The notes below the pieces were generated by a model, which saw nothing but the letters and a program-made list of their open reading frames with translations, had not been told where the DNA came from and made no database searches. This document shows, one piece after another, positions 7,567 to 53,752 of a stretch of 64,000 nucleotides of DNA (position 1 is the stretch's first letter; each line of letters begins with the position of its first letter). The position numbers and the translations under genes are program-made. Source of the stretch: Octopus sinensis (Eukaryota); assembly GCF_006345805.1 (NCBI RefSeq), contig NC_043011.1:26610464-26674463 (forward strand), in the 5' to 3' direction.

Positions 7567-7786
7567 CCCTTTAGTGTTTAAACCGGCCATATCTGGCCCA
7601 GATATTCTACATGTTTTACATTCAAACGGGCGATATCTAGCCTCTCACACCTAACCTACATTGATATTCTAAAAACAAACAATCACATCATTGAAACCTC
7701 AAAGCTATAAGATAATGTATGATTAATTCAAAACAATTTGAGTGAAAAATTATTACATTTAACAGAGTAATCTGAACACTAAAGGG
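7567..7786. mobile_element. piggyBac-type MITE, family E (orientation Y), complete
   Basis: TTAA TSDs at 7563-66 and 7787-90; perfect 12-bp TIR CCCTTTAGTGTT/AACACTAAAGGG. Confidence 0.9.
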
Positions 7787-7809
7787 TTAAGGCAACAATA
7801 TTGAACATA

Positions 7810-7934
7810 TGTGTGTGTGTGTGTGTATATGGTTGTTTAGCAGTTTCAGCCTATATATATAGATAGATAGATATAAGTAAAGTCATTTGCCACATATACG
7901 TGTGTGCGTATATGTATATATGTATAACTGTATG

Positions 7935-7967
<33 letters not shown>

Positions 7968-8010
7968 GCATACATGTATATACGTGTATGTGTATATATA
8001 TATATATGTT
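7810..8010. repeat. Compound (TG)n/(TA)n/(CA)n microsatellite block (representative of many in the window)
   Basis: Directly visible dinucleotide runs. Confidence 0.9.
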
Positions 8011-25464: not shown

Positions 25465-25541
25465 ATTGATGACTTACCTGATGGAGCAGTGAAACCACCA
25501 AAAGGAAAGTTTCCTATTTTCTTTTATGGAACTCATGAAAC
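25465..25541 (+). CDS. HDGFL2: Coding exon a: PWWP middle ([26 protein letters not shown]), 77 nt, phase 0->2
   Basis: Acceptor ttttag|ATT and donor AAC|gtaagt; boundaries correspond to those I recall for the PSIP1 PWWP exon. Confidence 0.95.
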
Positions 25542-28500
25542 GTAAGTAAAATTTAGTCTTTTCTCCCCAGCACCTGTTTTAGAAATGATTGCTTATAAAA
25601 TTGACCTGGAAATCAATAATTTTGAATTGCAATTTAAGTGGATCTTAAAAAACAAATGACCCTCTCATTCTCTTTACATACATTTACAGTACTCTACTTA
25701 CAAGAATGCTAAACAGACAATTTCTATAAAATACTCACTTTACTTTTTCTGCATACATTCATTTAGTCTTTAAAAAAATTTTCCATTTTTTTTCACTGTT
25801 ATACTAACATTGATTTACAAACTATACTAGTTATACATACAAGACCTACATCACATCAGCATCATATACATTTTAGCTAGCTGATACTTAAATTTCATCT
25901 GTTCTTCATGATTTATCAATATTTAAAATTTATATTTTTTTAAACTCTTTAACAAACACCTATGTTGATGAATGTCCTCTTCAACATTTTCTAAGAAAAA
26001 CAGGCCTTGTGAGTAGCTTTGGTTGACAGAAACTGAAAACAGCTCATTGTATATGTGTGTTTGTGTGTACCCTTGTCTAGACGTCATGTGAGGGTTGTAA
26101 AATGAGCATCACCATCATAGAAGCAATGTTATTCATTTCCAATCTTCTGTGAAAAACCTAAACATGTTTAGTCATGGGGAAATATTACCTTCTTGGAAAT
26201 GGACAAGGGTTGGCAACAGGAAGGGCAACAACAAAAAAATTTTAAAATCTACCTCAGTTTCTTTCCAAGCATGGAAAAGTTGATGTTAATTGATGCTGAT
26301 GATGGCTATCCTTCATGGACTTAGAATGATCGAAATGTTACTTTGGTAAGAATCAATGCTGTCTTTATCAACAGTGAGGAAGGTTCTAGGTCTACGAAGG
26401 CAATCTCTTGGATCAAAGTGCGATGATAAACATACATTGATTATTTACTTGTGGTTGGTGAGTAAAAGAGCGAAACTGCTTCCAAAATCAGTACTTGCTT
26501 ATCACATTTTAAACACCATTTACTTCATGAATGCAGCGAGCATATATTGTGTTTATGCTATGTTTGCTGTAAACATGTAATCTTGTAATTCTTTTGAGTA
26601 GTTGGTTGAAATCAGCTGTTGTTTATGTAAGGCAAAACAGTTGAGTAGCAATGTTAGAATGCATGTAACTGAATGGTGTAATGTGCAGAATGTGAATTTA
26701 GGAAATGTACATCAACCAAGGTTGAATCTCAAAGGAAAGTAATCATCATCATCATCATAATTTAATGTCCACATTTCCATTCTTGCATGGGCCATACAGA
26801 ATTTGTTGAGATAGACTTTTATGGCCAGATACCCTTCCTGTCACTGACTCTTAACCTGTTTCCCAAGCTAGGCAATATTCCCCTATGGCCAAACCTGTTT
26901 TCCGTGGACAACTGGAAATGAACAACATTCTTGTATGCTCGTTTACAACCATGGTGTCATTACAAGAGTACACACACACACACACATGGCGTTTTTACCT
27001 ACCAAATTAGCATTATCAAGGCTGTGGATGGCCTAGGGCTATAGTAGACATTTGCTCACAGTACCATGCAGTTGGACTGAGTCCATGACTTAGCTGTGCC
27101 TGCACCTATGTTGATACAATTGTTTTGATGATCTTTAATTGTGGATATAAGTATTCTATTGTGGTTTGGTAGAATTATGATGTTCAACCCTTTAGTATTC
27201 GGATTTCTTTGTCAAATGTGATACTTATTTGTTCACATTGTTTTGAATTAATCGTGCATTATCTAATATCTTCAAGGTTTCAATGATGTGACTGTTTATT
27301 TTAAGGATGACATTGTAGAGTAGGTGTGAGAGGCCAGATCTGGCTGGTTCGAACATAAAACAGGTAGAATATTTGAGCCTGATATAGCCGGTTTAAGTGC
27401 TAAACAGTTAAACCATTGATATGCAGCAGTACAGTTTCCATTATATACACCCACATACTCCATAATTGAGATTAAGATATACGTAAAAGGGTGTCTTCTA
27501 CGATAGTCCTGAGGGAGTAAACAAATCCTTGGCTTCAAAAACAGTTATGGGCTGGCAACAGCAAGAGCTTCCAACTGTAAAGTCTTGTCTCAAATAAGCT
27601 TCCATCTAACCCAGAGGTCTTCAGTAGAGGTCCATTTGACCCTTGGGTTCCATATAAGAATTTCTTGCTAAAATTTATGTGCAATAAATTATACTTCTAC
27701 AATACACAAGATATATAAAAAAAATTTTTTTACAATTCCTAATAGTATTCAATTATAAAATATATAATTTTTTTAAACACCAAATGGCTATGGAAGGCCA
27801 TTCAAGTAAAATAGGAATCAAAGAGGTCCAAAGATAAAAAATGGTTGGGAACCACTGATCTAACCCATGATATCATGGATAAAATGGATGGTAAATGAAC
27901 AACTAAAGCAGGCAATGGGCCTCTTTGATGTTGAGTTATATTAATATTTAAATTCACTGCCTGTTTTATTAAAAGCATATTGTTTATATTGACTTGTATA
28001 TTGTTCTCTTAGTAGGGGATTTTAATGTTTATTGGGGCAGTGAAATATCAAGTTGTTCTGTGCAAGAAGGGTCAGTAATTATGGCACTAATAATGAAGAT
28101 GTGACGTTGTTGGAATTTTGTTAGTATTTGTGAATTACATTTCTAATGCAGTTGGCTTTTTGTAGTATTTGTTGCTTAGATACTCTATCTGTCAGTTTTG
28201 TTTTGTATACATATTAAATGGTTTACATTTACGTGCTATATTAGTTTATTAATGAAGAATATATTGCATTATATTGTTTATATATATATATATATATACT
28301 ATGATAATATTTATACTGGTTATTAGAAAAGTTTTTGTAACATCTAGAAGTGTTATTAGGTACTTTTTAAAGCTTTGTTGCTTCAAATATTTATTTAATA
28401 GTAGACTGTTAGTTTTAACTTAGTTGTTTCAGTATTGGACTGAGTCTGTGTTGGGGTACTGCTTTAACCCTTTCGTTACCAAACCGCCCGAAAAAAATTT

Positions 28501-31500
28501 TGGTTAATGTGACCAAACCGCCCGAATTTACCTATTCATATTTAAATGAGAATATCAGAGTAAATCTCTTTAGTACATTCGTGAAAACACGTATTATACT
28601 TCGTAAACAGTTCAACTACAGTTGTGTACAAAAATCGAAGTGTAATTTTAATTCCGTGAATTATGGGAGATTTTTTTCCGAAATTTGTTCCTATTGTGTT
28701 TTCAAAATTTGTAATTCTGACAAAAAATGGATACGAATTTCATTATATCAAGCAGTGAGTCAGAATTCGAAGGATTTTCTACTGAAGACCTTCATAAATC
28801 TAACTCTATGACTGAAAAAAAAAAAGCATGTGGTATTTGATAATGAATCTGATGTTTCATTTTCCGAAAGTGAAAACAGTGAATCCGAGATCTCCGACAG
28901 CGATAAAGAAAATGAATTGGCACCTGAATGGAGTGAAAATTTAAAAACTGTTTCTTTCGGTGATTTTTCTGAAGAAACTGGACCAAGCCACAGACTTTCC
29001 CAGAAGAGTAAAGCCTTAGACTATTTCTTTTTACTTTTTCGAATGAGCCCATTTGAAATCATTACGGCGGAAACGAACTGTTACGCTAAACGTAAACAAA
29101 GCGAAAGAAAGGATAGTTTGTTATTTCCCACAACCTTAAATGAAATTAAGGCCTATTTTGCCATAAATATTATTATGGGTATCAGAAAGTTACCCAGAAT
29201 AACAAATTCTTTTGTAAAATTTTGTTGTATACCCAATTGAATATTAGCTAATAACCCATTTTCTATAGCGATGTTTGAACAAAATTTTAATTTTATATTT
29301 TGTTGAATTTACCTGTATCTACCTGCAATTAGAGTCACTTTGTGACAAAAATTATAGTATAGAATTGGTTGAGAACATTTCATTAAATTATCTTCCAAAA
29401 TTCATGTTAATATATTGATAAATAAAAAAGTTATAGTTGTTTAATGAAACCAGACTAAATTTATGATTACATTAGAAATTAATTGAAACACATAAGGGGT
29501 GTATTTTGGTCAGAAATATAGTAACGAAAGGGTTAAAGGGTTTTAGTTGGACAAATCAGTCTCAGCTGTTGTGTTTTTCCAAGTCTGGTACTTATGATAT
29601 TGGTTTCTTTTGCTGAACCACTAAGTTTTGGGGATGTAAACAAACCAACACTGGTTGTCAAGTGGGGCTATAGTAAAAGTGTCATGAACTCAAAACCATG
29701 TGGTTGGGAAACAAGTTTCCTACCATGCAGCCATGCTTGTCCTTACTGCAATTGTTTTTCTCCATCAGAAGTTCATATTTAGACAAGTCAGCATGAAAAT
29801 AATTTTTAAAATTGTAATGAACAGTTTAGTCTTCATCTTATTTGTTAACTAACATCAAGTCACTAGAAGCAATGAATGTTCATTTAGGTTTTTTTTTTAT
29901 TTTAGACTCTTTTTACATCTCTAGCCTGCATTTAACATTTTACGAGTAAAAAAATATCGTCTTGTAAAATGTATTTGTCTAAGTGAGACAGGAAATATCT
30001 CATGTACCTAAGGGGTCAATCTGAGCTGAACTTGAGTGATAAATGAGTGAGTGTAAATGAATGCAGTTAATGTTTAGTTGGGATTATTTTTTAATTGGGA
30101 AAACATTAGCAAAGGGTGGAGAATTGAGCAGGTATGGATGTGTAGTTAAGAAACTTGCTTCCCAACCATGTGGTCTTGGAATTCAGTCCCACTGTTCTGC
30201 ACCACTTGGGCAAGTGTCTTCTGCTGTAGCTCCAGGCCAACCAAAGTCTTGTGAGTGGATTTTGTAGGCAGAGACTGAATGAAGCCCATTGTATATGTTT
30301 GTGTGTACATTTCTCGAGGAATTGTTGCATGATATGATAGTTGTAAATAAGCACCATCATATAAGTGAGTGTTCATTTCTGGTCTTACAAGAAAAACATA
30401 TCCGGCTTTGGGAAAATACTTTGCTTTGAGACAGGTGAAGGTTGGCACTGGAAAGGGCACCCAGCCATAGAAAAATTTTCCACAACAAATTCTGTGTGAC
30501 TTATGCAGACATGGAAAACATAACATGAAATGGTGGTGGTGGTTGAAGAAGAATTAGTTTGAAGTTGGATGACATTATGGGGAAAAGATAAGTGCGGTAT
30601 AAAAATTGTAGCAGGGTTGAAATAACTAGCTATTGTAGTTTGAGAGAAGAGCCTCAAACTTGGTTCTGAGCTAGAAACTAGTATTATTTTACTTATTGAT
30701 ACATGTGCTCCATTATTCTCTTTGTGGTACAAATCAGTGTTTAGTAGCTGCTGAAGAATAAAATACTAGGTGGTTATAGAAACAAATCTCAGTTCTGTGA
30801 TACAGATAATACTATACCTTACCTATATACATGAAAGCACTTGCACAATAAGCTGATGTCTTAGCAAGCAGAGGCTTTGCCATCGTTTAATGTCTACTTT
30901 TTCATGCTTTCATGGGTCAGATTGTTTGTTGTGGCAGGTTTTCTATGGTTGGATGCCTTTCTTGTCATCAATCTCAACAAGGTAATATTTTCCCCTAGCA
31001 AGACATATGTTTCCCAGAGGACTAATAATGAATAACACTGATTGTATGGCATTGATGCTCATTTACAACCGTCATCTATGTTTAGACGAGGGTAGACAAA
31101 CATAAACACATACACACACACACAGAGCAGGCTTTCTGTTTCTATCTACCAAATCCACTCAAAGCTTTTGTCAGTCCAGGGTTATAATAGATGAGGTTGA
31201 ATCTAAGACAACATAGTTGGGAAACAAGCTTCTTCATCACAAAACCATACCTGCATCTTCCAATTCTATTAATCACCAAACAAATTTAATTGAAATTTTT
31301 CAGTATGCGTATAAGTTGCTTAACCTTGGGCGAGCCCTTGGACAATATTATCTAGTTCGTCCTATTTAAAGATGGTAGCAATGTGTAGTTTATGGGAAAT
31401 TTTTCTAGCAGGTTGTGCTACCTTGTAGAGGCTCCCTCATTAGCTAATATTTATTTTAGATCAAATTTCTAGATCAATATCCTCATTGGTTATTGATTTC

Positions 31501-34500
31501 CAACAGGCAAATCATTAGCTAACTGCATTTAAAATGGCAAGAATAGCAAGGGATTCTGTTTGACTCTGGCAGAACAAATCTCACTAAGGAATTTTTTCAA
31601 AGCACCAGTTTCTTTTCCTTTTATTTTTATTTTACTGATTTACTGTTGCATAGTGAAACTGTACATCCCTCCCTGTAAAAAGTGGTAGTAGCCAGCCATT
31701 ATAAATAGACCAGTAGCCAGTCAATAGAAAGAAGGTAACGGTTGGGAAGGCCAAGAGTATGTGTAGACTGTGTTGATAGTCATGTCTGTGCTGAATACAG
31801 TAATTATACCGTGATACTGAATGGATGTTATATCAATTCAACCTTTGGAGGATAATAACACTGTATGACTGGGGGTTGTGCAGTGCCAGATTAGAACCAT
31901 CCTATCGACGACTTTGTAATATAACAATATCTGTAAGAACGACAACTGTCGTGAAAAGACCGCTTTACAACATATACGTTAACCCTTTAGCATTCACATT
32001 ATTTTGTCAAAAGCAATACTTGATTATTCACATTGTTTTGAATTAATCATGCTTTGAGATTTTGATGAGGAAACTTTAGTTTTAGAATGATATTGTAGGG
32101 TTGCTGTGAGAAGCCAGATCTCACCAGTTTGAGCATAAAACAGGTTGAATATTTTCACCGGATATGAGCAGATTAAATGCTAAAGGATTAATGAAAGATA
32201 TACATAAATGACAGGTTTCTGCACAGTTCCCATTTATCAAATTCCACTCACAAGTTTTTAGTAAACCTGAACCACAGGTTGCAAAGAGAATTTCTTAACT
32301 GCTGAGGCATAAAAGTATCTTGAATTTTATTTAAAATTTCTCTTTGTCCTTTGTAGCAGTGTACCGTTAATGTTGAACTAGAATTAGTGTTTTAGGCATG
32401 AAATATTGCATCTTGAAATTATTTAATATTTAAAAAAAAAATTTTTATAGATGCCAAAAGAGTGATTCTGCATGATTTCTGTACATTAGTTGGGGATGTG
32501 AATCTAGTCTGAATAATCAGTGTTAACATAATACTGGATCATTAGTTTTTGACCTTGGATTATTTATGTAATTTTGTTTCTTTGTAGGGCCTTTTTAGCA
32601 CCAAAAGACATATTTCCTTACAACAAGTATAAAAACAAATACGGAAACCCACAAAAAAGGAGGGGTTTTAATGAAGGTTTATGGGAAATAGTTCATGACC
32701 CAAATGTAAAATTTCATCGATCAAGTTCAGTAAGTATATGTTTTTCTTTTCTTTCCTGATAATTCTGAAAATATCTCTACAGATTGTGTTGATGTTAGAA
32801 AGCTTGTTTCCATGTTATGAAGAAGTAAATTTAGTAATGAATTAATAGTATTGTGGGCTAAAGAAATTAACCATAACTTAGTCAATGACATCATATTTGT
32901 CATAAGACATCCTCAGGACCTATTTATGACTATCAAGCATCAACGTCCTCTGGAATTTTTAAAATTGCATTTACAAACTGGTATTCCATTGGTTAAACAA
33001 TAAGGGTTCAGGATGATATGATTAATGGAACAGTCTGCTTGTGAAATTAATGTGCAAGTGGCTGAGCACTCCACAGACACTTGTACCCTTAATGTAGTTC
33101 TCAGGGAGATTCAGCATGACACAGAGTGTGACATGGTTGGCCCTTTGAAACGCAAGTACTACTCATTTTTGCCAGCTGAGTGGACTAGAGCAATGTGAAA
33201 TAAAGTATCTTGCTCAAGGATACAATTCATCGACAGGAATTGAACTCAACTTAAAAATCGTAAGCTGAATACCCTGACCACTAAGCCACACACTTTCACT
33301 GCATTTGCAAAAGCATTATAAAAAAAAGTAATAAAGGACAAAAACAAAAATATTAAAGAAATTCATACTAGATACCTAATATCTTTGATAAAATATAGTT
33401 CTTGAGATGTGGGATGCATATACAAGGCCCAAACAAATGTCCATAGCATTCATTCAAATAACTACATTCATGTAAAGGCAGGGTTTTTATTTTTACGCCA
33501 AATAACTTTAATACCAACAGGGTTAGTTTCTAGCCTTATATGTGGTATTGATTTGTGTTGTCTCTTACTAACATCCAGGTTGTAATATTATATAGAGTTT
33601 AATGGCATTTGCAGTGGTGAGCAGTCCAGAGTAAAGTAAATCCAGATTTACTTTAGCACATATGCAATCAAATCAGTTTTCCTTTGCAGGAACATTTGTT
33701 CAGCTCCCTACACTCTCTGAAAACCTCTGGAATTGTTACCCAAAATGCCTCTTACGATATGATATTAAGTCATATCTAGTGGCAAGGCTCCAGGTTTGAA
33801 GTACAAAATTTTTGGGAAGTATGGAGTTACCCCATAGCCAGGATTACTCTTAAGTCTGCGGTGGTTTCCTCCAAGCCAAATATTGGATAGAGCATTCTTA
33901 GCAGTAACATCACATTAAGCCAAATACCAGCTATATTTATCCAATTCTACTCCTCACTGTATATGACCCCTCTCCCTAGTAATATGTAACCTATATGAAC
34001 TACTTCAGGGTGTATAACCAAATATGATGACCTTGTTTTTCCTTATATGTTTCTGTAAGAAAAATAGGCACCAGTTCTACTTAAAACTTGAGGATATACA
34101 TTTGGTTTGTATTAGGAAATGCAACTATTTAAGAAATAGAGTAAAAATATACTAAATTCTTAAGTCAGTATTGTAATACTTGTAAACTTGTTTAATAAGA
34201 AACAAATGTAAATTACTGAGATGATTAAGGACAATAATAACTCTTTGTAAGCTCAGTTCTTTTAAGTGTTAAATTCTGAAATTGGTGTCTAACATATTAT
34301 TATAATTTCTTGTTTATTAGGTATTATTTTTTTTTATGGCACATATAAAACCCATTGATGTTTCCCAGTAGCTTTTACCATTTTACATAAGTCAGAAACT
34401 TAAGAATTGCTTGAGAATCAGTTATATAAGTTGAATTAAGTCCAATTTTGTCTTATGACTTGAGGATATACATAAAGTAGCATATGTAGAAATTCTTAAC

Positions 34501-49500: not shown

Positions 49501-52500
49501 ATGCATCTTAATTACACAACTATCACTCATCATCATCATTGTTTAACATCCGTTTTCCATGCTAGCATGGGTTGGACGGTTCGACCGGGGATCTGGGAAG
49601 CCAGAAGGCTGCACCAGGCTCTAGTCTGATCCAGCAGTGTTTCTACAGCTAGATGCCCTTCCTAACGCCAACCACTCCGTGAGTGTAGTGGGTGCTTTTT
49701 ACGTGCCACCGGCACAGGTGCCAGGTGAGGCTGGCAACAGCCAATCATTTATTTTTTACCTGTTTGAATAAAAATAGATATTTCTGTTTCTTTTGTATTT
49801 TTGCAGTGTTGACTGCTTGCTTTTTTCATTTTTATTTATTTTTTTATTTTTTTTATATTTCAAGACCATTTTTAACAGAATGTTTTGTTTATTCCAGTTT
49901 TACAAACTGAATCTACTTTGATACAAATGGATAATGAAATTAAAAAATCTCTTCAAATTGATAAAACAGTAAGTATGTATATATATATGTCTATTGTTGC
50001 TGTCCTTTCTAATTTTCTAAAACTGAGGAAAGTTTTGTTTGTGTATACGTATTGAGCAATACATGGTTTATATTTCAGTCAAATCATAAGCAGCACAGGT
50101 CCTTCACTGCCTACACAAAATGCATTAGTTGGCTAAGCTTCCTTGTTCTTATTCTAACTAAGCCACAAAAGAGCTGTGACTAAATCTGTAGTGATCCTTA
50201 GAATAGATTCATTTGGCTGCTGATTTTGGAGAAACCACACAGATTCAGAGACTAAAATTTCATTAACTGTCTGTATATACAAAAATGTCTCTTTTAACCA
50301 TCTGCAAAGCCAATTGCAGCAAGAGATCTGTATAGTTCTTTCCCTCTATAATTCTTCCAATCCTGTTAGAAACTAGAGGTTTTGTATGAAATTGCAGTTA
50401 GTTATAAAAATATAAGCTATTGCATTAATTTGAATGAAATTTGCTACAATATATCAATTCCTGGGCATTGATTTCCTGTCTCAGAGCTGACTTTGTGCTC
50501 TTGTTAATCTCTTGGAAGCTGCACATCTCCCATTCAAAAGAAGCTTTTCATCTCCTCCCTTCAAAAATTCTGTTGGACCCAGTAAAATAATGTTATTTAC
50601 TCTTATTACAATAATTATTCTCCTCATAATTCCACCAATAAATATACTGAGACTCTGCTTTTAAAATATCAGTAAGCTGTTTTCTGTTGTATTTTTTTTT
50701 TTTTTCATTTTTGTTTTATTTTATCCTTACCATTCACTAATGAAAGTATTGATGCAATGTCAACTTCACGATAACTCCACTCCTGCTCAGGACCAATAAA
50801 ATCTGATATCCCTAATTATTTTCTCCAAGTCCAGGCTTTCTAAATTAATAATAAATAAAATCATGAATAAATTTCGCCAATTTCTTACTCACCTTTTAAG
50901 GTATTAACCATAACTTCCACAATGCTCAAAAATCAAATTAAGAAAAATGTGGAGAAATTCCACTCACTAAAACACAAAAAACTAATCAGGCAGATATGGT
51001 GCAAACAAGGAAGTTCGTCCTAAAATGGTGATTAAACTGAGGTTGATTTGATTTAAGAATGCTTAGTCCTAGTTTTCAACCGTAAATAACAAACACTATT
51101 CAAATGGTGCTTAAGTGCAGTTCAGGATTTGGTGACAGTTGCACTATCTTAATTATTTTCTATATTAAATTTTCCAAACTTTAAAAAGAATGATCTAAAT
51201 TATACTTTTTCTTCTGAATGACGTTTTCAGCATATATCACTATTACTCTTTTTACTATATTTAGTCATTAGACTGAAGCACCACTTCAAAAAGTGTAGTT
51301 GATCAAATTGACCCGTGTTTTTTTTTATTTTTAGTACCTATTCTGTCAGTCTCATTTTTGCTGAACCTCTAAGTTATAGTGATTTAAACAAACCAATACT
51401 TGTTATCTTGTGGGACCAAATATCTGTGAATCAGTGCTCTTGCATTAGAAGATGTATGTTTTAATATGTAAAAAGCATGCCATAAGACAAAGTTTATTTG
51501 CCATATGCATTTGGGAATAATGTTAATGTACTTTGTATTGCAGGATGTTGATAAATGTATTGCTATTATGGAAGACTTAGAAGCTTTGCCTGTCACACAA
51601 ATCATGTTGAAAAAGAATCCCGATATAATGAATACCATAAAAAAGGTAAAATGCAAGGTCTAATATTTTCTTTATTTTTAGTGGACTCAAACTGTTACAT
51701 TTTGAACTTAGTCAAAAGGCATATTATTGGAAATGTGTTTGTTTTCTAATGGTTTTACCCTTAATCAACAGTAAATTTATTTTCATTTTTACCTCTTATC
51801 AAGCAAAAAATTACATAGTTGTTAAATGGTTGTAAATAAATGGATTTTTTTCTCTAAGTTGGCAACATGGTTAAATTACAATGGGTTATACGTTTTTTGA
51901 CATTCAAAAATGTTCAAAACTTAATCTATTATGATTGTACTTTTATATACAACTTTTTTTTAAATTTTAGCATTTATGCATATATATTCAAAATAACAAA
52001 GGCAAGAAAGCTGGGAATTGTCAGCTGCTTGCCTGATTTGTATAGTTCAAACAAGCAAGGAATTTTAATTATTAAAGTAACGAGCTATATGGTTTTTATG
52101 CATTCTATATTCTCTGTCTGTCTGTTTCTCTCTTAACAAATATTACATTAGAGTAGATTATAATTTACTTGCCTCTTTATGAAATTTCAAGTTATATTTT
52201 GGACATTTTTTAATTCTCTCAAATGATTAACTAAAATGAATGATTAATCCACAAATTCAATTCAGAACCTAGCAAATTTATGTTCTTTCTATGCATTTTT
52301 GTTATTGCGTTTTATTTTACATTGTTTCTACTATACTATTTTTGGTAAAGTGTGATGCTTAAATTGATCATTTTATAAATGCACTTGGTATTTTTGCATT
52401 TTTCATTTTTGCATTGATTTTTTTCTATAGATTAGAAAATATAAAGGTAGTGAGAAGATAAAGAAAAAAGCCGAAGTTATTTACCACAAATTCAAAAATC

Positions 52501-53752
52501 TTTTTATGGTTGCTGAAGGAGAATCTTTCTCACAGGTAATATATTGACTTTATTTTCACAACTTAGATAAAAAATAAATTTTATAACAGACTAGCACTAT
52601 GACCTGGCATACAATTGGCGTATCAAGTTTCGGGCATTTTGATTGGGTTTTGGATAGAAAATTCACAAAAAAGTCACTTCTGTTGATTTTTTAATGGCTT
52701 TGAGGGGTGACTGGGGAAATGTAAAGATGTGCATGACCACTCTTGGACAGTTTTGAATGACCATAGAAAGTGCGAGCCCTCTAACTGAAAAATTGTGGAT
52801 TTGTATAAAGGACACACACACACACATTTTGCCGTTTATATATATAGAAATGTATTTATGAGTGAGTGAGTATGCACATGTTTACCATAGTTACTAAAAA
52901 TACCGGCAGAACTGTTTTTTGAAAGTGTTTCATTAAAGAAACAAAGTAATCTAATCGTATATAGTGAATTTTTACCATTTTTCTGTTGGAATATGCTAGT
53001 TATGTTTCGTTTAATTCTTAAAATGAGGAGTTTAGTAAAATAACTTTGTCATTGTTAAATCAGTGTTTGGAATACAAATTAATGTGAAATTTTGAAGGAT
53101 GGTTTTAATTTAGATCACTTTAACCCTTTTGCATTTAAACCAGCCATAGCCAACCCAAATATTCCACCCGTTTTATGTTTGAAATGGCCAGATCCAGCCT
53201 CTCATACCTACCCTACAATGTAATTTTAAAAATAAACAATCACATCATCAAAATCTCAACTCTATGAGATAATGCATGATTAATTCAAAACCTTGTGGAT
53301 AAATAAGCATTAAATTTGACAGAGGAATCTAAATGCTACAGGGTTAAAACAGGAAACTTGTATCATAGAACCAAGAGTGAAATTGGAATCTTGAAGTTAT
53401 TTAACCCATTACCATTTAAACCAACCAATTCTGACCCAGATATTTTGTTTTATGTTCAAACTGTCAAAATATGTCCTTTTACACATACCCTACGATGTCA
53501 TTCTAAAAATATACAGTCACATCATTGAAATCTCAAAGGTATGAGATAATATATGATTATTCAAAACAATAACTCCTTATACTCCAATAGGCGCAAGAGT
53601 AGCTGTGTGGTAAGTAGCTTGCTAACCAACCACATGGTTCTGGGTTCAGTCCCACTGCGTGGCATCTTGAGCAAGTGTCTCCTGCTATAGCCTCGGGCCG
53701 ACCAATGCTTTGTGAGTGGATTTGGTAGACGGAAACTGAAAGAAGCCTGTCG

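What the first reader, a model, noticed from the sequence alone, without database searches (positions are those of the whole stretch)
28727..28792. piggyBac transposase N-terminus carries an IBD/TND-binding FxGF-like motif, inside the gene encoding an IBD protein
Seen: translating from ATG 28727, which the ORF track misses, gives [22 protein letters not shown], an S/E-rich stretch followed by FEGF (28766-28777) and more acidic residues. Established: the LEDGF/HRP-2 IBD and related TFIIS-N-terminal domains bind acidic FxGF motifs (IBM/TIM) in JPO2, MLL1, IWS1 and the domesticated pogo transposase PogZ. Serine phosphorylation (CK2-type) raises their affinity, and LEDGF tethers lentiviral integrase to H3K36me gene bodies. 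Inference: this piggyBac family may use a TIM to dock on PWWP-IBD readers or other TND elongation factors, steering insertion into transcribed gene bodies. I am not aware of this being described for piggyBac. The window is rich in intronic TTAA-flanked derivatives, which fits but does not prove targeting. Location within the candidate partner's own gene may be coincidence, and FxGF is short.
Basis: partly seen in the sequence, partly recalled or inferred. Interest (0 to 1): 0.85.

Follow-up and report, generated by a model that had tools for sequence, protein, structure and literature searches.

The report
LEDGF-type docking motif on piggyBac transposases

Summary
ATG 28727 opens [22 protein letters not shown], with FEGF at 28766-28777. 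It lies in a 1,065-bp TTAA-flanked piggyBac element (28468-29532) within an intron of a PWWP + LEDGF/IBD gene. This copy is dead: it has a frameshift in an A-run and a 1.5-kb internal deletion.

The motif is not chance. Among 90 relatives with an N-terminal extension, 28 carry FxGF there, against 2.0 expected from shuffles. In 244 relatives there are 71 FxGF in the first 100 residues and 3 in the other 98,184. Carriers include molluscs, an echinoderm, a hemichordate, a cnidarian and a chimaera.

Many relatives have the full known LEDGF-binding layout: a hydrophobic 'xxIFG' helix, an 8-10-residue acidic Ser-rich linker, FxGF, then [TS]xx[DE][ILV]. This matches the KMT2A, IWS1 and JPO2 motifs in solved IBD complexes. 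IWS1 reads [13 protein letters not shown]; the window reads [13 protein letters not shown].

AlphaFold leaves the motif disordered and not docked on the transposase core.

No paper in the searched library links transposases to FxGF. Binding and gene-body targeting remain untested. The position inside the LEDGF-like gene is probably coincidence.

The parts
28464..28467 (+). TTAA target-site duplication, 5' side
   Evidence: Read directly from the sequence; part of inverted-repeat pair I1.
28468..28479 (+). 5' terminal inverted repeat CCCTTTCGTTAC
   Evidence: Exact match to the pattern, with an exact inverted partner at 29521-29532.
28727..28792 (+). N-terminal module of the ancestral transposase, [22 protein letters not shown]: hydrophobic NFII, S/E linker, FEGF (28766-28777), STEDL
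   Evidence: The same sequence is in L001 copies. It scores 24.8 bits against the profile of relatives' motifs, and 0 of 5000 shuffles reach that. Read against the CK2 consensus S-x-x-[D/E], S8, S10, S12 and S18 all fit.
28815..28825 (+). A-run carrying the frameshift that breaks the ORF
   Evidence: Frame changes between ATG 28727 and the frame that continues from 28827. The L001:1598-2676 copy is in frame here.
28827..29204 (+). Continuation of the transposase frame: acidic region with the second conserved motif ESDVSFS (28845-28865), the conserved W (28929-31) and the first ~64 residues of DDE_Tnp_1_7 (29013-29204)
   Evidence: ORF 28830-29240; Pfam PF13843 E = 2.2e-7; column conservation in A4.
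29205..29210 (+). Junction of the ~1.5-kb internal deletion that removed most of the catalytic domain
   Evidence: Element positions 1-745 and 744-1073 match L001:5393-6127 and 7637-7970 of a 2.6-kb copy. L001:1598-2676 has the same junction.
29521..29532 (-). 3' terminal inverted repeat
29533..29536 (+). TTAA target-site duplication, 3' side
25465..25542 (+). Host gene, PWWP exon upstream of the intron that holds the element
32589..32714 (+). Host gene, next PWWP exon downstream of the element
   Evidence: tblastn 71% identity, E = 2e-16; Pfam PWWP.
49898..49968 (+). Host gene, IBD exon 1 (..[21 protein letters not shown])
   Evidence: Open segment and AG/GTAAGT splice signals. The residues matching human K360, I365 and D366 are kept.
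51544..51645 (+). Host gene, IBD exon 2 ([34 protein letters not shown])
   Evidence: Pfam LEDGF 7.7e-29 on the joined exons. The residues matching human K401 and K402 are kept.
52431..52535 (+). Host gene, IBD exon 3 ([35 protein letters not shown])
   Evidence: phmmer against PDB LEDGF IBD chains gives E = 2.5e-19. The R404/R405 basic pair is R-K here.

Best explanation
The window holds a fossil. It is a 1,065-bp internally deleted, frameshifted, TTAA-flanked piggyBac derivative that still carries the first ~160 codons of its ancestral transposase.

The extreme N-terminus of that transposase is a conserved short linear motif in a disordered acidic tail. Its parts are a hydrophobic anchor, a Ser/Asp/Glu linker with CK2-type serines, an invariant F-x-G-F, and [TS]-x-x-[DE]-[ILV]. 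The module is shared by a large PGBD4-like piggyBac clade across several animal phyla. It has the architecture and much of the sequence of the IBD-binding motifs (IBM, a subtype of TND-interacting motif) of KMT2A, IWS1, JPO2 and DPF3a.

The most likely mechanism is inferred, not shown. The transposase uses this motif to dock on the TFIIS-N-terminal-type IBD of the host PWWP-IBD protein, the LEDGF/HRP2 (JASPer in flies) orthologue. Serine phosphorylation would raise the affinity. The transposase would then be tethered to H3K36me3-marked transcribed chromatin, which may bias where it integrates.

Shown here: the element's anatomy, the motif's conservation, enrichment and position, its similarity to solved IBMs, its predicted disorder, and a host IBD with the basic patch intact. 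Inferred: binding, phospho-regulation and targeting. The insertion inside the LEDGF-like gene itself is most likely coincidence.
For: Anatomy.

Conservation and enrichment:
- 28 of 90 relatives at under 50% identity with an N-terminal extension have FxGF there, against 2.0 expected (maximum 8 in 1000 shuffles), and none occurs in their other 29,948 residues.
- 71 FxGF occur in the first 100 residues of 244 relatives (68 proteins) against 3 in 98,184 other residues. It is by far the commonest hydrophobic-x-small-hydrophobic pattern there.
- In an alignment not anchored on the motif, the homologous columns read D 52, F 52, E/D 52, G 61 and F 41 of about 80 sequences.
- The motif starts at residues 10-31 in 27 of the 28 carriers.
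- Position -2 is S or E in 21 of 28, which is the published (S/E)xFxGF consensus (PMC7337902).
- The whole module is duplicated in P0017 and P0029.
- High-copy full-length clusters keep it: P0217 (97 members), P0214 (46), P0213 (24), P0224 (23), P0012 (17).

Taxa: Octopus, Pecten, Ostrea, Mytilus, Littorina, Bradybaena, Diadema, Ptychodera, Actinostola and Callorhinchus.

Similarity to solved IBMs, read from PDB fusion chains:
- KMT2A is RRFRAVFGES..GEDEQFLGFGSDE.
- IWS1 is [25 protein letters not shown].
- JPO2 is LRRIFIEDTDSETEDFAGFT.
- piggyBac examples are DFWRAIMGESDSDEGGFEGFSLDEI (P0245), RDIFGSSDEEGDSDLDFEGF (P0246) and LADIFIDDDDDSDFLGFTEDNL (P0025).
- Against a profile built only from piggyBac motifs, the real score is reached by 1 of 5000 shuffles for IWS1, 6 for JPO2 and 26 for KMT2A.

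Structure: an AlphaFold2 model of P0246 has a confident core (mean pLDDT 88.8). Residues 1-45 are below 50, there is a 4-residue helix exactly on the 'YRDI(FG)' element, and the motif does not dock on the core.

The IBD-FxGF system works in protostomes: JIL-1 DFxGFDE binds the JASPer LEDGF domain (PMC6877644). The octopus IBD is intact, with Pfam at 7.7e-29 and the K360, I365, D366, K401, K402 and R404 equivalents kept.

Precedent for piggyBac tethering to a chromatin reader is the T. ni transposase binding BRD4 (PMC4786924).
Against: - No binding, phosphorylation or insertion-site data exist for any of these proteins.
- The window family's own motif is atypical. Its linker is 6 residues rather than 8-16, and it has 'NFII' instead of 'IFG'.
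- Many carriers have FxGF only about 8 residues after Met-1, with no room for the helix that the TND review calls obligatory (PMC9987994).
- About 60% of sampled relatives lack strict FxGF. Variants occur even among close kin: CSGF, WSGF, FESF, FDVF, FEVF.
- The DPF3a IBM peptide does not score above its shuffles against the piggyBac profile.
- A PDB-wide profile search with the motif alone found nothing.
- The samples are related sequences. The second sample was retrieved with a profile built from motif-bearing proteins.
- In T. ni piggyBac the acidic N-terminus is autoinhibitory and helps dimerisation (bioRxiv 10.1101/2022.09.26.509586). That role could explain some of the constraint.
Confidence: 0.55

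Rival explanations
1. The module is an internal regulatory element of the transposase. It would be a CK2-phosphorylated acidic tail that binds the transposase's own DNA-binding surfaces, or its partner protomer, to inhibit DNA binding or promote dimerisation, as reported for the T. ni piggyBac N-terminus. The FxGF would be the hydrophobic contact for that self-interaction rather than for a host protein.
For: For T. ni piggyBac, CK2 phosphorylation of the N-terminus inhibits transposase-DNA interaction, the N-terminus promotes dimerisation, and a low pI with CK2 sites is general in piggyBac-like elements (bioRxiv 10.1101/2022.09.26.509586). The window peptive and its relatives are rich in S-x-x-[D/E] sites.
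Against: The AlphaFold2 monomer model leaves residues 1-45 unplaced at pLDDT below 50 and not docked on the core, although contact in trans within a dimer was not modelled. T. ni piggyBac, on which this model is based, has no FxGF (stated from memory). The in-register three-part similarity to KMT2A, IWS1 and JPO2 motifs would then be unexplained. The two roles are not mutually exclusive.
Confidence: 0.2
2. The motif is a real host-docking peptide, but its partner is not the LEDGF/HRP2-type IBD. Candidates are another TFIIS-N-terminal domain (IWS1, TFIIS, Elongin A, PPP1R10 or MED26) or an unrelated reader of acidic-aromatic peptides.
For: TND-interacting motifs share the helix-plus-acidic-linker layout across several TNDs (PMC9987994). 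Sister piggyBac lineages keep only the 'HDIFG[ST]SDEE' helix-linker part without FxGF, which is the layout of TIMs for non-LEDGF TNDs. The octopus IBD exons also give a weak hit to the Pfam Med26/TFIIS helical-bundle model.
Against: According to the review, FxGF is the feature specific to LEDGF/HRP2 partners and is essential in all of them (PMC9987994). The best-matching solved motifs are all LEDGF IBD ligands.
Confidence: 0.17
3. The FEGF in the window is a chance tetrapeptide in a decaying pseudogene and has no functional history.
For: The copy is dead, with a frameshift and a deletion. FxGF is only four residues long. Some copies and relatives have lost it: P0007 has FESF and P0003 has FDVF.
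Against: The enrichment and positional conservation across phyla argue against chance. Three independent O. sinensis copies, including a 65%-identical sister family, keep F-x-G-F at the same place. No shuffle of the window peptide reaches its score (0 of 5000).
Confidence: 0.03

Closest known systems
IBD-binding motifs (IBM / FxGF-type TND-interacting motifs) of KMT2A, IWS1, JPO2/CDCA7L, POGZ, DPF3a and Drosophila JIL-1
   Same: Both share a short hydrophobic helix ending in 'IFG/IFI', an 8-12-residue acidic Ser-rich linker, (S/E)-x-F-x-G-F, then acidic residues. Both sit in disordered regions and carry CK2-type serines. The sequences align in register (PMC7337902, PMC9987994, PMC6877644).
   Different: Here the motif sits at the extreme N-terminus of a mobile-element transposase, not in a cellular transcription or chromatin factor. 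Many carriers lack the helix, and the window family has a shorter linker. Binding has not been tested.
POGZ, a domesticated pogo transposase that binds the LEDGF IBD (PDB 6emp)
   Same: It is a transposase-derived protein with an FxGF-type IBM, solved in complex with the IBD.
   Different: POGZ comes from a different superfamily (pogo, Tc1/mariner). It is an immobile host gene, and its motif lies in the C-terminal part (stated from memory). The piggyBac carriers include full-length, multi-copy clusters of 555-620 aa, which suggests recently mobile elements.
Lentiviral integrase-LEDGF/p75 tethering
   Same: The proposed outcome is the same: an integrating element is tied to the PWWP-IBD reader of H3K36me3 gene bodies.
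   Different: HIV integrase binds the IBD through a folded catalytic-core dimer interface centred on I365/D366, not through an FxGF peptide. The piggyBac case would use the cellular-partner pocket.
Trichoplusia ni piggyBac N-terminus (CK2-phosphorylated, autoinhibitory) and its BRD4/BET interaction
   Same: Same superfamily, and both have a disordered acidic N-terminal tail with CK2 sites. The T. ni case also sets a precedent for tethering a piggyBac transposase to a chromatin reader (PMC4786924).
   Different: T. ni piggyBac has no FxGF (from memory). Its known partner is the BET ET domain and its bias is toward transcription start sites. The field states that piggyBac N-termini 'cannot be aligned', whereas this clade has alignable motifs.
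Ty5 integrase targeting domain binding Sir4
   Same: It is a short, phosphorylation-dependent peptide on an integrase that docks on a chromatin protein and sets target choice (established knowledge, from memory).
   Different: It belongs to an LTR retrotransposon, uses a different motif and partner, and targets heterochromatin.

Membership tests
piggyBac (PGBD4-like) DNA transposon | TTAA target-site duplication flanking the element | tested here: met
   TTAA at 28464-67 and 29533-36.
piggyBac (PGBD4-like) DNA transposon | Terminal inverted repeats beginning CCC...GGG | tested here: met
   CCCTTTCGTTAC at 28468-79 with an exact inverted copy at 29521-32.
piggyBac (PGBD4-like) DNA transposon | DDE_Tnp_1_7 transposase domain | tested here: met
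   Only the first ~64 residues survive in the window (PF13843, E = 2.2e-7). A profile search returned 24,307 relatives.
piggyBac (PGBD4-like) DNA transposon | Intact, autonomous transposase ORF | tested here: not met
   A frameshift at 28815-25 and a ~1.5-kb internal deletion. The 2.6-kb O. sinensis copy is also full of stop codons.
LEDGF/HRP2 IBD-binding motif (IBM; FxGF-type TIM) | F-x-G-F with S or E at position -2 ((S/E)xFxGF) | tested here: met
   The window has S12-E-F14-E-G-F17. In relatives, position -2 is S in 16 and E in 5 of 28. Consensus taken from PMC7337902.
LEDGF/HRP2 IBD-binding motif (IBM; FxGF-type TIM) | Acidic, Ser/Thr-rich linker of 8-16 residues upstream of FxGF | tested here: inconclusive
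   The window linker is SSSESE, only 6 residues. Relatives with an upstream anchor have 8-10 residues, for example P0122, P0041, P0043, P0246 and P0264. The length range is from PMC9987994.
LEDGF/HRP2 IBD-binding motif (IBM; FxGF-type TIM) | Short hydrophobic alpha-helix upstream of the linker | tested here: inconclusive
   The window has only N-F-I-I at residues 4-7. At least 10 of 34 FxGF carriers in alignment A4 have 'xxIFG/ALF/AIM'-type anchors. AlphaFold2 puts a helix at residues 11-14 on 'YRDI' of P0246. Many carriers have no room for a helix.
LEDGF/HRP2 IBD-binding motif (IBM; FxGF-type TIM) | Lies in an intrinsically disordered region | tested here: met
   P0246 residues 1-45 have pLDDT below 50 while the core exceeds 90. 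This was tested on a relative, not on the window protein.
LEDGF/HRP2 IBD-binding motif (IBM; FxGF-type TIM) | CK2-type phospho-acceptor serines in the linker | tested here: met
   Read directly from the sequence: S8, S10, S12 and S18 fit S-x-x-[D/E]. Actual phosphorylation cannot be tested here.
LEDGF/HRP2 IBD-binding motif (IBM; FxGF-type TIM) | Direct, F-dependent binding to an IBD/TND | not testable with these tools
   No complex-prediction or binding tool was available. Structure prediction accepts only window or retrieved sequences, one chain at a time.
HDGF-related PWWP-IBD proteins (LEDGF/p75, HRP2, JASPer): the host gene | N-terminal PWWP domain plus C-terminal LEDGF/IBD (TND) domain in one gene | tested here: met
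   PWWP at 3.9e-6 and LEDGF at 7.7e-29 on joined exons of the + strand. PDB LEDGF IBD chains match at 2.5e-19. That all exons belong to one transcript is inferred from their order and strand.

The most novel reading that the evidence does not exclude
A large, ancient clade of piggyBac transposons, found from cnidarians to cartilaginous fish, carries a genuine phospho-regulated LEDGF/HRP2-binding motif at the transposase N-terminus. It would use this motif to hijack the H3K36me3 reader, so that integration is steered into transcribed gene bodies. That would be a DNA-transposon counterpart of lentiviral LEDGF tethering, but through the pocket used by cellular partners. Sister lineages with only the helix-linker part may dock on other TFIIS-N-terminal domains of the elongation machinery.
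Probability: 0.4. Interest if true: 0.9.

Novelty: new variant of a known kind. Interest (0 to 1): 0.8.

Why it matters
Host-factor tethering explains where retroviruses and LTR retrotransposons land. For cut-and-paste DNA transposons the only comparable case is T. ni piggyBac with BRD4.

A conserved LEDGF-type docking peptide on many piggyBac transposases would have four consequences:
- It would be a second, independent tethering route for this superfamily.
- It would make the targeting question directly testable with peptides, F-to-A mutants and LEDGF knock-outs.
- It contradicts the current statement that piggyBac N-termini cannot be aligned.
- It offers a small natural module for steering piggyBac gene-delivery vectors toward or away from gene bodies.

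It also adds a large set of natural FxGF-motif variants that could refine what defines an IBD ligand.

Tried and rejected
- Word-index protein searches with the repaired window N-terminus and with P0002 returned only a few truncated octopus and mollusc gene models, none with a close N-terminus. The full HMMER search was needed.
- A PDB search with the motif profile alone and with two concatenated piggyBac motifs found nothing at E up to 10. Such short, compositionally biased queries cannot pass on their own.
- Real IBM sequences were recovered only by adding part of the IBD, so that the IBD-IBM fusion chains were pulled in. The motif part of the query was a composite, not a natural sequence. 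It served only to display the PDB residues.
- The key TND and IBM papers (PMC6065015, PMC8943916) are not held in the library. Motif definitions were taken from PMC9987994, PMC7337902 and PMC6877644.
- The idea that the window shows insertion targeting was rejected. Only two elements share this TIR, and the other nine approximate TIR matches lack TTAA flanks.
- The G-to-S change in P0007 (FESF) looked like evidence against conservation. A genomic copy of that sister family has FKGF, so it is a copy-specific change.
- A fused IBD-peptide chain was not submitted to structure prediction, because the tool admits only window or retrieved sequences.
Full report
**What is in the window**

From ATG 28727 the + strand reads [37 protein letters not shown], with F-E-G-F at 28766-28777. 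The frame breaks in an 11-base A-run (28815-28825). One base on, the reading continues as ..[58 protein letters not shown].. and runs into the start of the piggyBac transposase domain (Pfam DDE_Tnp_1_7, E = 2.2e-7).

The ORF sits in a 1,065-bp element bounded by TTAA + CCCTTTCGTTAC (28464-28479) and GTAACGAAAGGG + TTAA (29521-29536).

An Octopus sinensis locus (L001, CM016867.1) was fetched through a related gene model. It holds a 95%-identical copy of the same 1.07-kb derivative, and this copy reads straight through the frameshift site. It also holds a decayed 2.6-kb copy. Against that longer copy, the window element lacks about 1.5 kb of catalytic domain. Both short copies share the same deletion junction, so the derivative was itself mobilised.

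The window therefore holds a dead, non-autonomous piggyBac relic that preserves the ancestral transposase N-terminus.

**The host gene**

PWWP-coding exons at 25465-25542 and 32589-32714 flank the element. Three exons at 49898-49968, 51544-51645 and 52431-52535 encode a LEDGF/IBD domain. Pfam gives LEDGF at 7.7e-29 and PWWP at 3.9e-6. PDB LEDGF IBD chains match at 2.5e-19.

The octopus IBD keeps the equivalents of human K360, I365, D366, K401, K402 and R404. R405 is K, F406 is Y and V408 is G (alignment; human numbering from memory). The claim 'inside the gene encoding an IBD protein' is correct, and the element is on the same strand as the gene.

**Is the motif more than chance?**

This is the only acidic FxGF in all six frames of the 64-kb window. 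The three found in L001 are all piggyBac N-termini. One belongs to a sister family only about 65% identical at the DNA level: MDRSFMLSSSDYEFKGFSMENM.

A full HMMER search of 1.84 billion representatives found 24,307 relatives, and I took the best 150. The query profile came from the catalytic-domain fragments plus three N-termini, none of which has FxGF.
- Of 90 representatives with at least 70 residues before the core, 28 have FxGF in that region. Shuffles of those regions give 2.0 on average and at most 8 in 1000. The other 29,948 residues hold none.
- A looser scan finds 36 of 148 representatives with an acidic FxGF. Two of them carry the whole module twice.
- A second, 90%-cluster sample gives 33 of 110. 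It has some retrieval bias, because its query profile came from motif-bearing proteins.
- Pooled over 244 proteins, there are 71 FxGF in the first 100 residues against 3 in 98,184 other residues. No other hydrophobic-x-small-hydrophobic pattern comes close.
- In an alignment of 94 full-length proteins that was not anchored on the motif, the homologous columns read D 52, F 52, E/D 52, G 61 and F 41 of about 80.
- The motif starts at residues 10-31 in 27 of the 28 carriers.
- Around the motif, positions -8 to -1 are D/S/E. Position -2 is S or E in 21 of 28. Position +4 is T or S, +7 is D or E, and +8 is a hydrophobic residue.

Named carriers come from Octopus, Pecten, Ostrea, Mytilus, Littorina, Bradybaena, Diadema, Ptychodera, Actinostola (a cnidarian) and Callorhinchus (a chimaera). 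Multi-copy full-length clusters keep the motif, for example P0217 with 97 members, P0214 with 46 and P0012 with 17.

On a neighbour-joining tree of the catalytic core, carriers form several large groups with scattered losses and variants: 17 parsimony changes among 94 tips. The motif is therefore a conserved feature of a large clade, but not universal.

**What it resembles**

The TND review describes these motifs as a short helix, an 8-16-residue acidic linker that is often phosphorylated by CK2, and an FxGF. The FxGF is essential for all known LEDGF/HRP2 partners (PMC9987994). The consensus is given as (S/E)xFxGF, and the DPF3a peptide is LFGSTSESDTSTFHGFDEDD (PMC7337902). In Drosophila, JIL-1's DFxGFDE binds the LEDGF domain of JASPer, so the system operates in protostomes (PMC6877644).

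I read real motif sequences from PDB IBD-IBM fusion chains:
- KMT2A: GTNLRRFRAVFGESGGGGGSGEDEQFLGFGSDE
- IWS1: [25 protein letters not shown]
- JPO2: LRRIFIEDTDSETEDFAGFT

piggyBac N-termini line up with them part by part:
- DFWRAIMGESDSDEGGFEGFSLDEI (P0245, Littorina)
- RDIFGSSDEEGDSDLDFEGF (P0246, Actinostola)
- VWDIFFGDSDSDSDFEGFTTEEI (P0122, Ptychodera)
- LADIFIDDDDDSDFLGFTEDNL (P0025)

The window's [13 protein letters not shown] sits against IWS1's [13 protein letters not shown].

I scored the known motifs against a profile built only from piggyBac motifs. The real score was reached by 1 of 5000 of its own shuffles for IWS1, 6 for JPO2 and 26 for KMT2A. The DPF3a peptide was not distinguishable (1705 of 5000). 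The held-out window peptide scored 24.8 bits, and no shuffle reached that.

The window family is an atypical member. It has 'NFII' instead of 'IFG' and a 6-residue linker. Many carriers have FxGF too close to Met-1 to hold a helix.

**Structure**

An AlphaFold2 model of P0246 with a 94-sequence alignment has a confident core (mean pLDDT 88.8, pTM 0.81). Residues 1-45 are below pLDDT 50. The only secondary structure there is a 4-residue helix at 11-14, on the 'YRDI' of the YRDIFG element. The motif does not dock on the core. This fits a linear motif that acts in trans. It does not exclude contact with a partner protomer.

**Mechanism and rivals**

Most likely (0.55) the module is an IBM-type docking peptide for the host PWWP-IBD protein, strengthened by serine phosphorylation. 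In the window peptide, S8, S10, S12 and S18 fit S-x-x-[D/E]. Binding would tether the transposase to transcribed chromatin.

The main rival (0.2) is the self-regulatory role shown for the T. ni N-terminus, namely CK2-dependent inhibition of DNA binding and help with dimerisation. It is not exclusive of the first explanation. A third possibility (0.17) is a different partner, such as another TND. Sister lineages keep only 'EE[FY]HDIFG[ST]SDEE', the helix and linker without FxGF, which is the layout of motifs for non-LEDGF TNDs. Chance is effectively excluded.

The window gives no evidence of targeting. Only two elements share this TIR. The family is abundant, with five or six fragments in 13.7 kb of L001, so one copy in a large intron of the LEDGF-like gene is unremarkable.

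**Novelty**

Full-text searches found no paper containing both 'transposase' and 'FxGF', and none containing both 'piggyBac' and 'TFIIS N-terminal domain'. None of the listed papers that pair piggyBac or transposase with LEDGF appears, from its title and abstract, to describe such a motif. The only one I opened, PMC4786924, mentions LEDGF only in connection with HIV and MLV targeting.

The piggyBac literature states that the N-terminal regions 'cannot be aligned'. Known neighbours are POGZ, a domesticated pogo transposase with an IBM (PDB 6emp), HIV integrase-LEDGF, which uses a different interface, and T. ni piggyBac-BRD4 (PMC4786924). I class the finding as a new variant of a known kind: a known motif class on a new carrier, implying a new tethering route for DNA transposons.

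**Limits**

All functional steps are inferred. The samples are phylogenetically related, and only a minority have species names. Human residue numbers, the human query sequences used and the statement that T. ni piggyBac lacks FxGF are from memory.

Noticed in passing
window 28845-28865 (ESDVSFS); alignment A4 columns 163-166: A second N-terminal motif, E-S-D-[IV]-[DES]-[VI]-S, is more widely conserved than FxGF in this clade: S in 81 of 93, D in 83 of 93, and I/V/L in 77 of 93. Its function is unknown. It could be a CK2 site cluster or a SUMO-interaction-like motif.
   Followed up: partly
proteins P0223, P0228, P0230, P0232, P0236-P0240: A sister lineage keeps 'EE[FY]HDIFG[ST]SDEE..DIDFEGSDIEV'. 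This is the helix and acidic linker of a TND-interacting motif without FxGF, fused directly to the second motif. It may dock on a different TND.
   Followed up: no
proteins P0290, P0294-P0297; P0244, P0271, P0289, P0306: Other piggyBac lineages have their own conserved N-terminal peptides, 'ALEYFFSLPD[DN]EE' and 'MAFQFLQSLI'. piggyBac N-termini therefore seem to carry interchangeable short motifs, contrary to the view that they cannot be aligned.
   Followed up: no
proteins P0017 and P0029: The whole module, hydrophobic anchor plus acidic linker plus FxGF, is present twice in tandem in these two transposases. This fits a multivalent docking peptide.
   Followed up: no
window 58894-59121: A 220-bp TTAA-flanked miniature element has the same TIR (CCCTTTCGTTAC / CCCTTTCATTAC) and no coding capacity. 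It is the only other member of this TIR family in the window.
   Followed up: partly
L001:964-7970 (O. sinensis CM016867.1): Five or six copies or fragments of this family and a sister family are packed into 7 kb next to a V-type ATPase subunit gene. The annotated 'proteins' P0002 and P0007 are gene models on decayed transposon copies.
   Followed up: partly
window 29205-29210 and L001:1598-2676: The window copy and an O. sinensis copy share the same internal deletion junction at 95% identity. The 1.07-kb derivative was therefore itself mobilised as a non-autonomous element.
   Followed up: yes
window 49898-52535 (IBD exons): Relative to human LEDGF, the octopus IBD has T for L368, Y for F406 and G for V408, while I365, D366 and the basic patch are kept. 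These positions line the partner-binding surface and could alter specificity.
   Followed up: no
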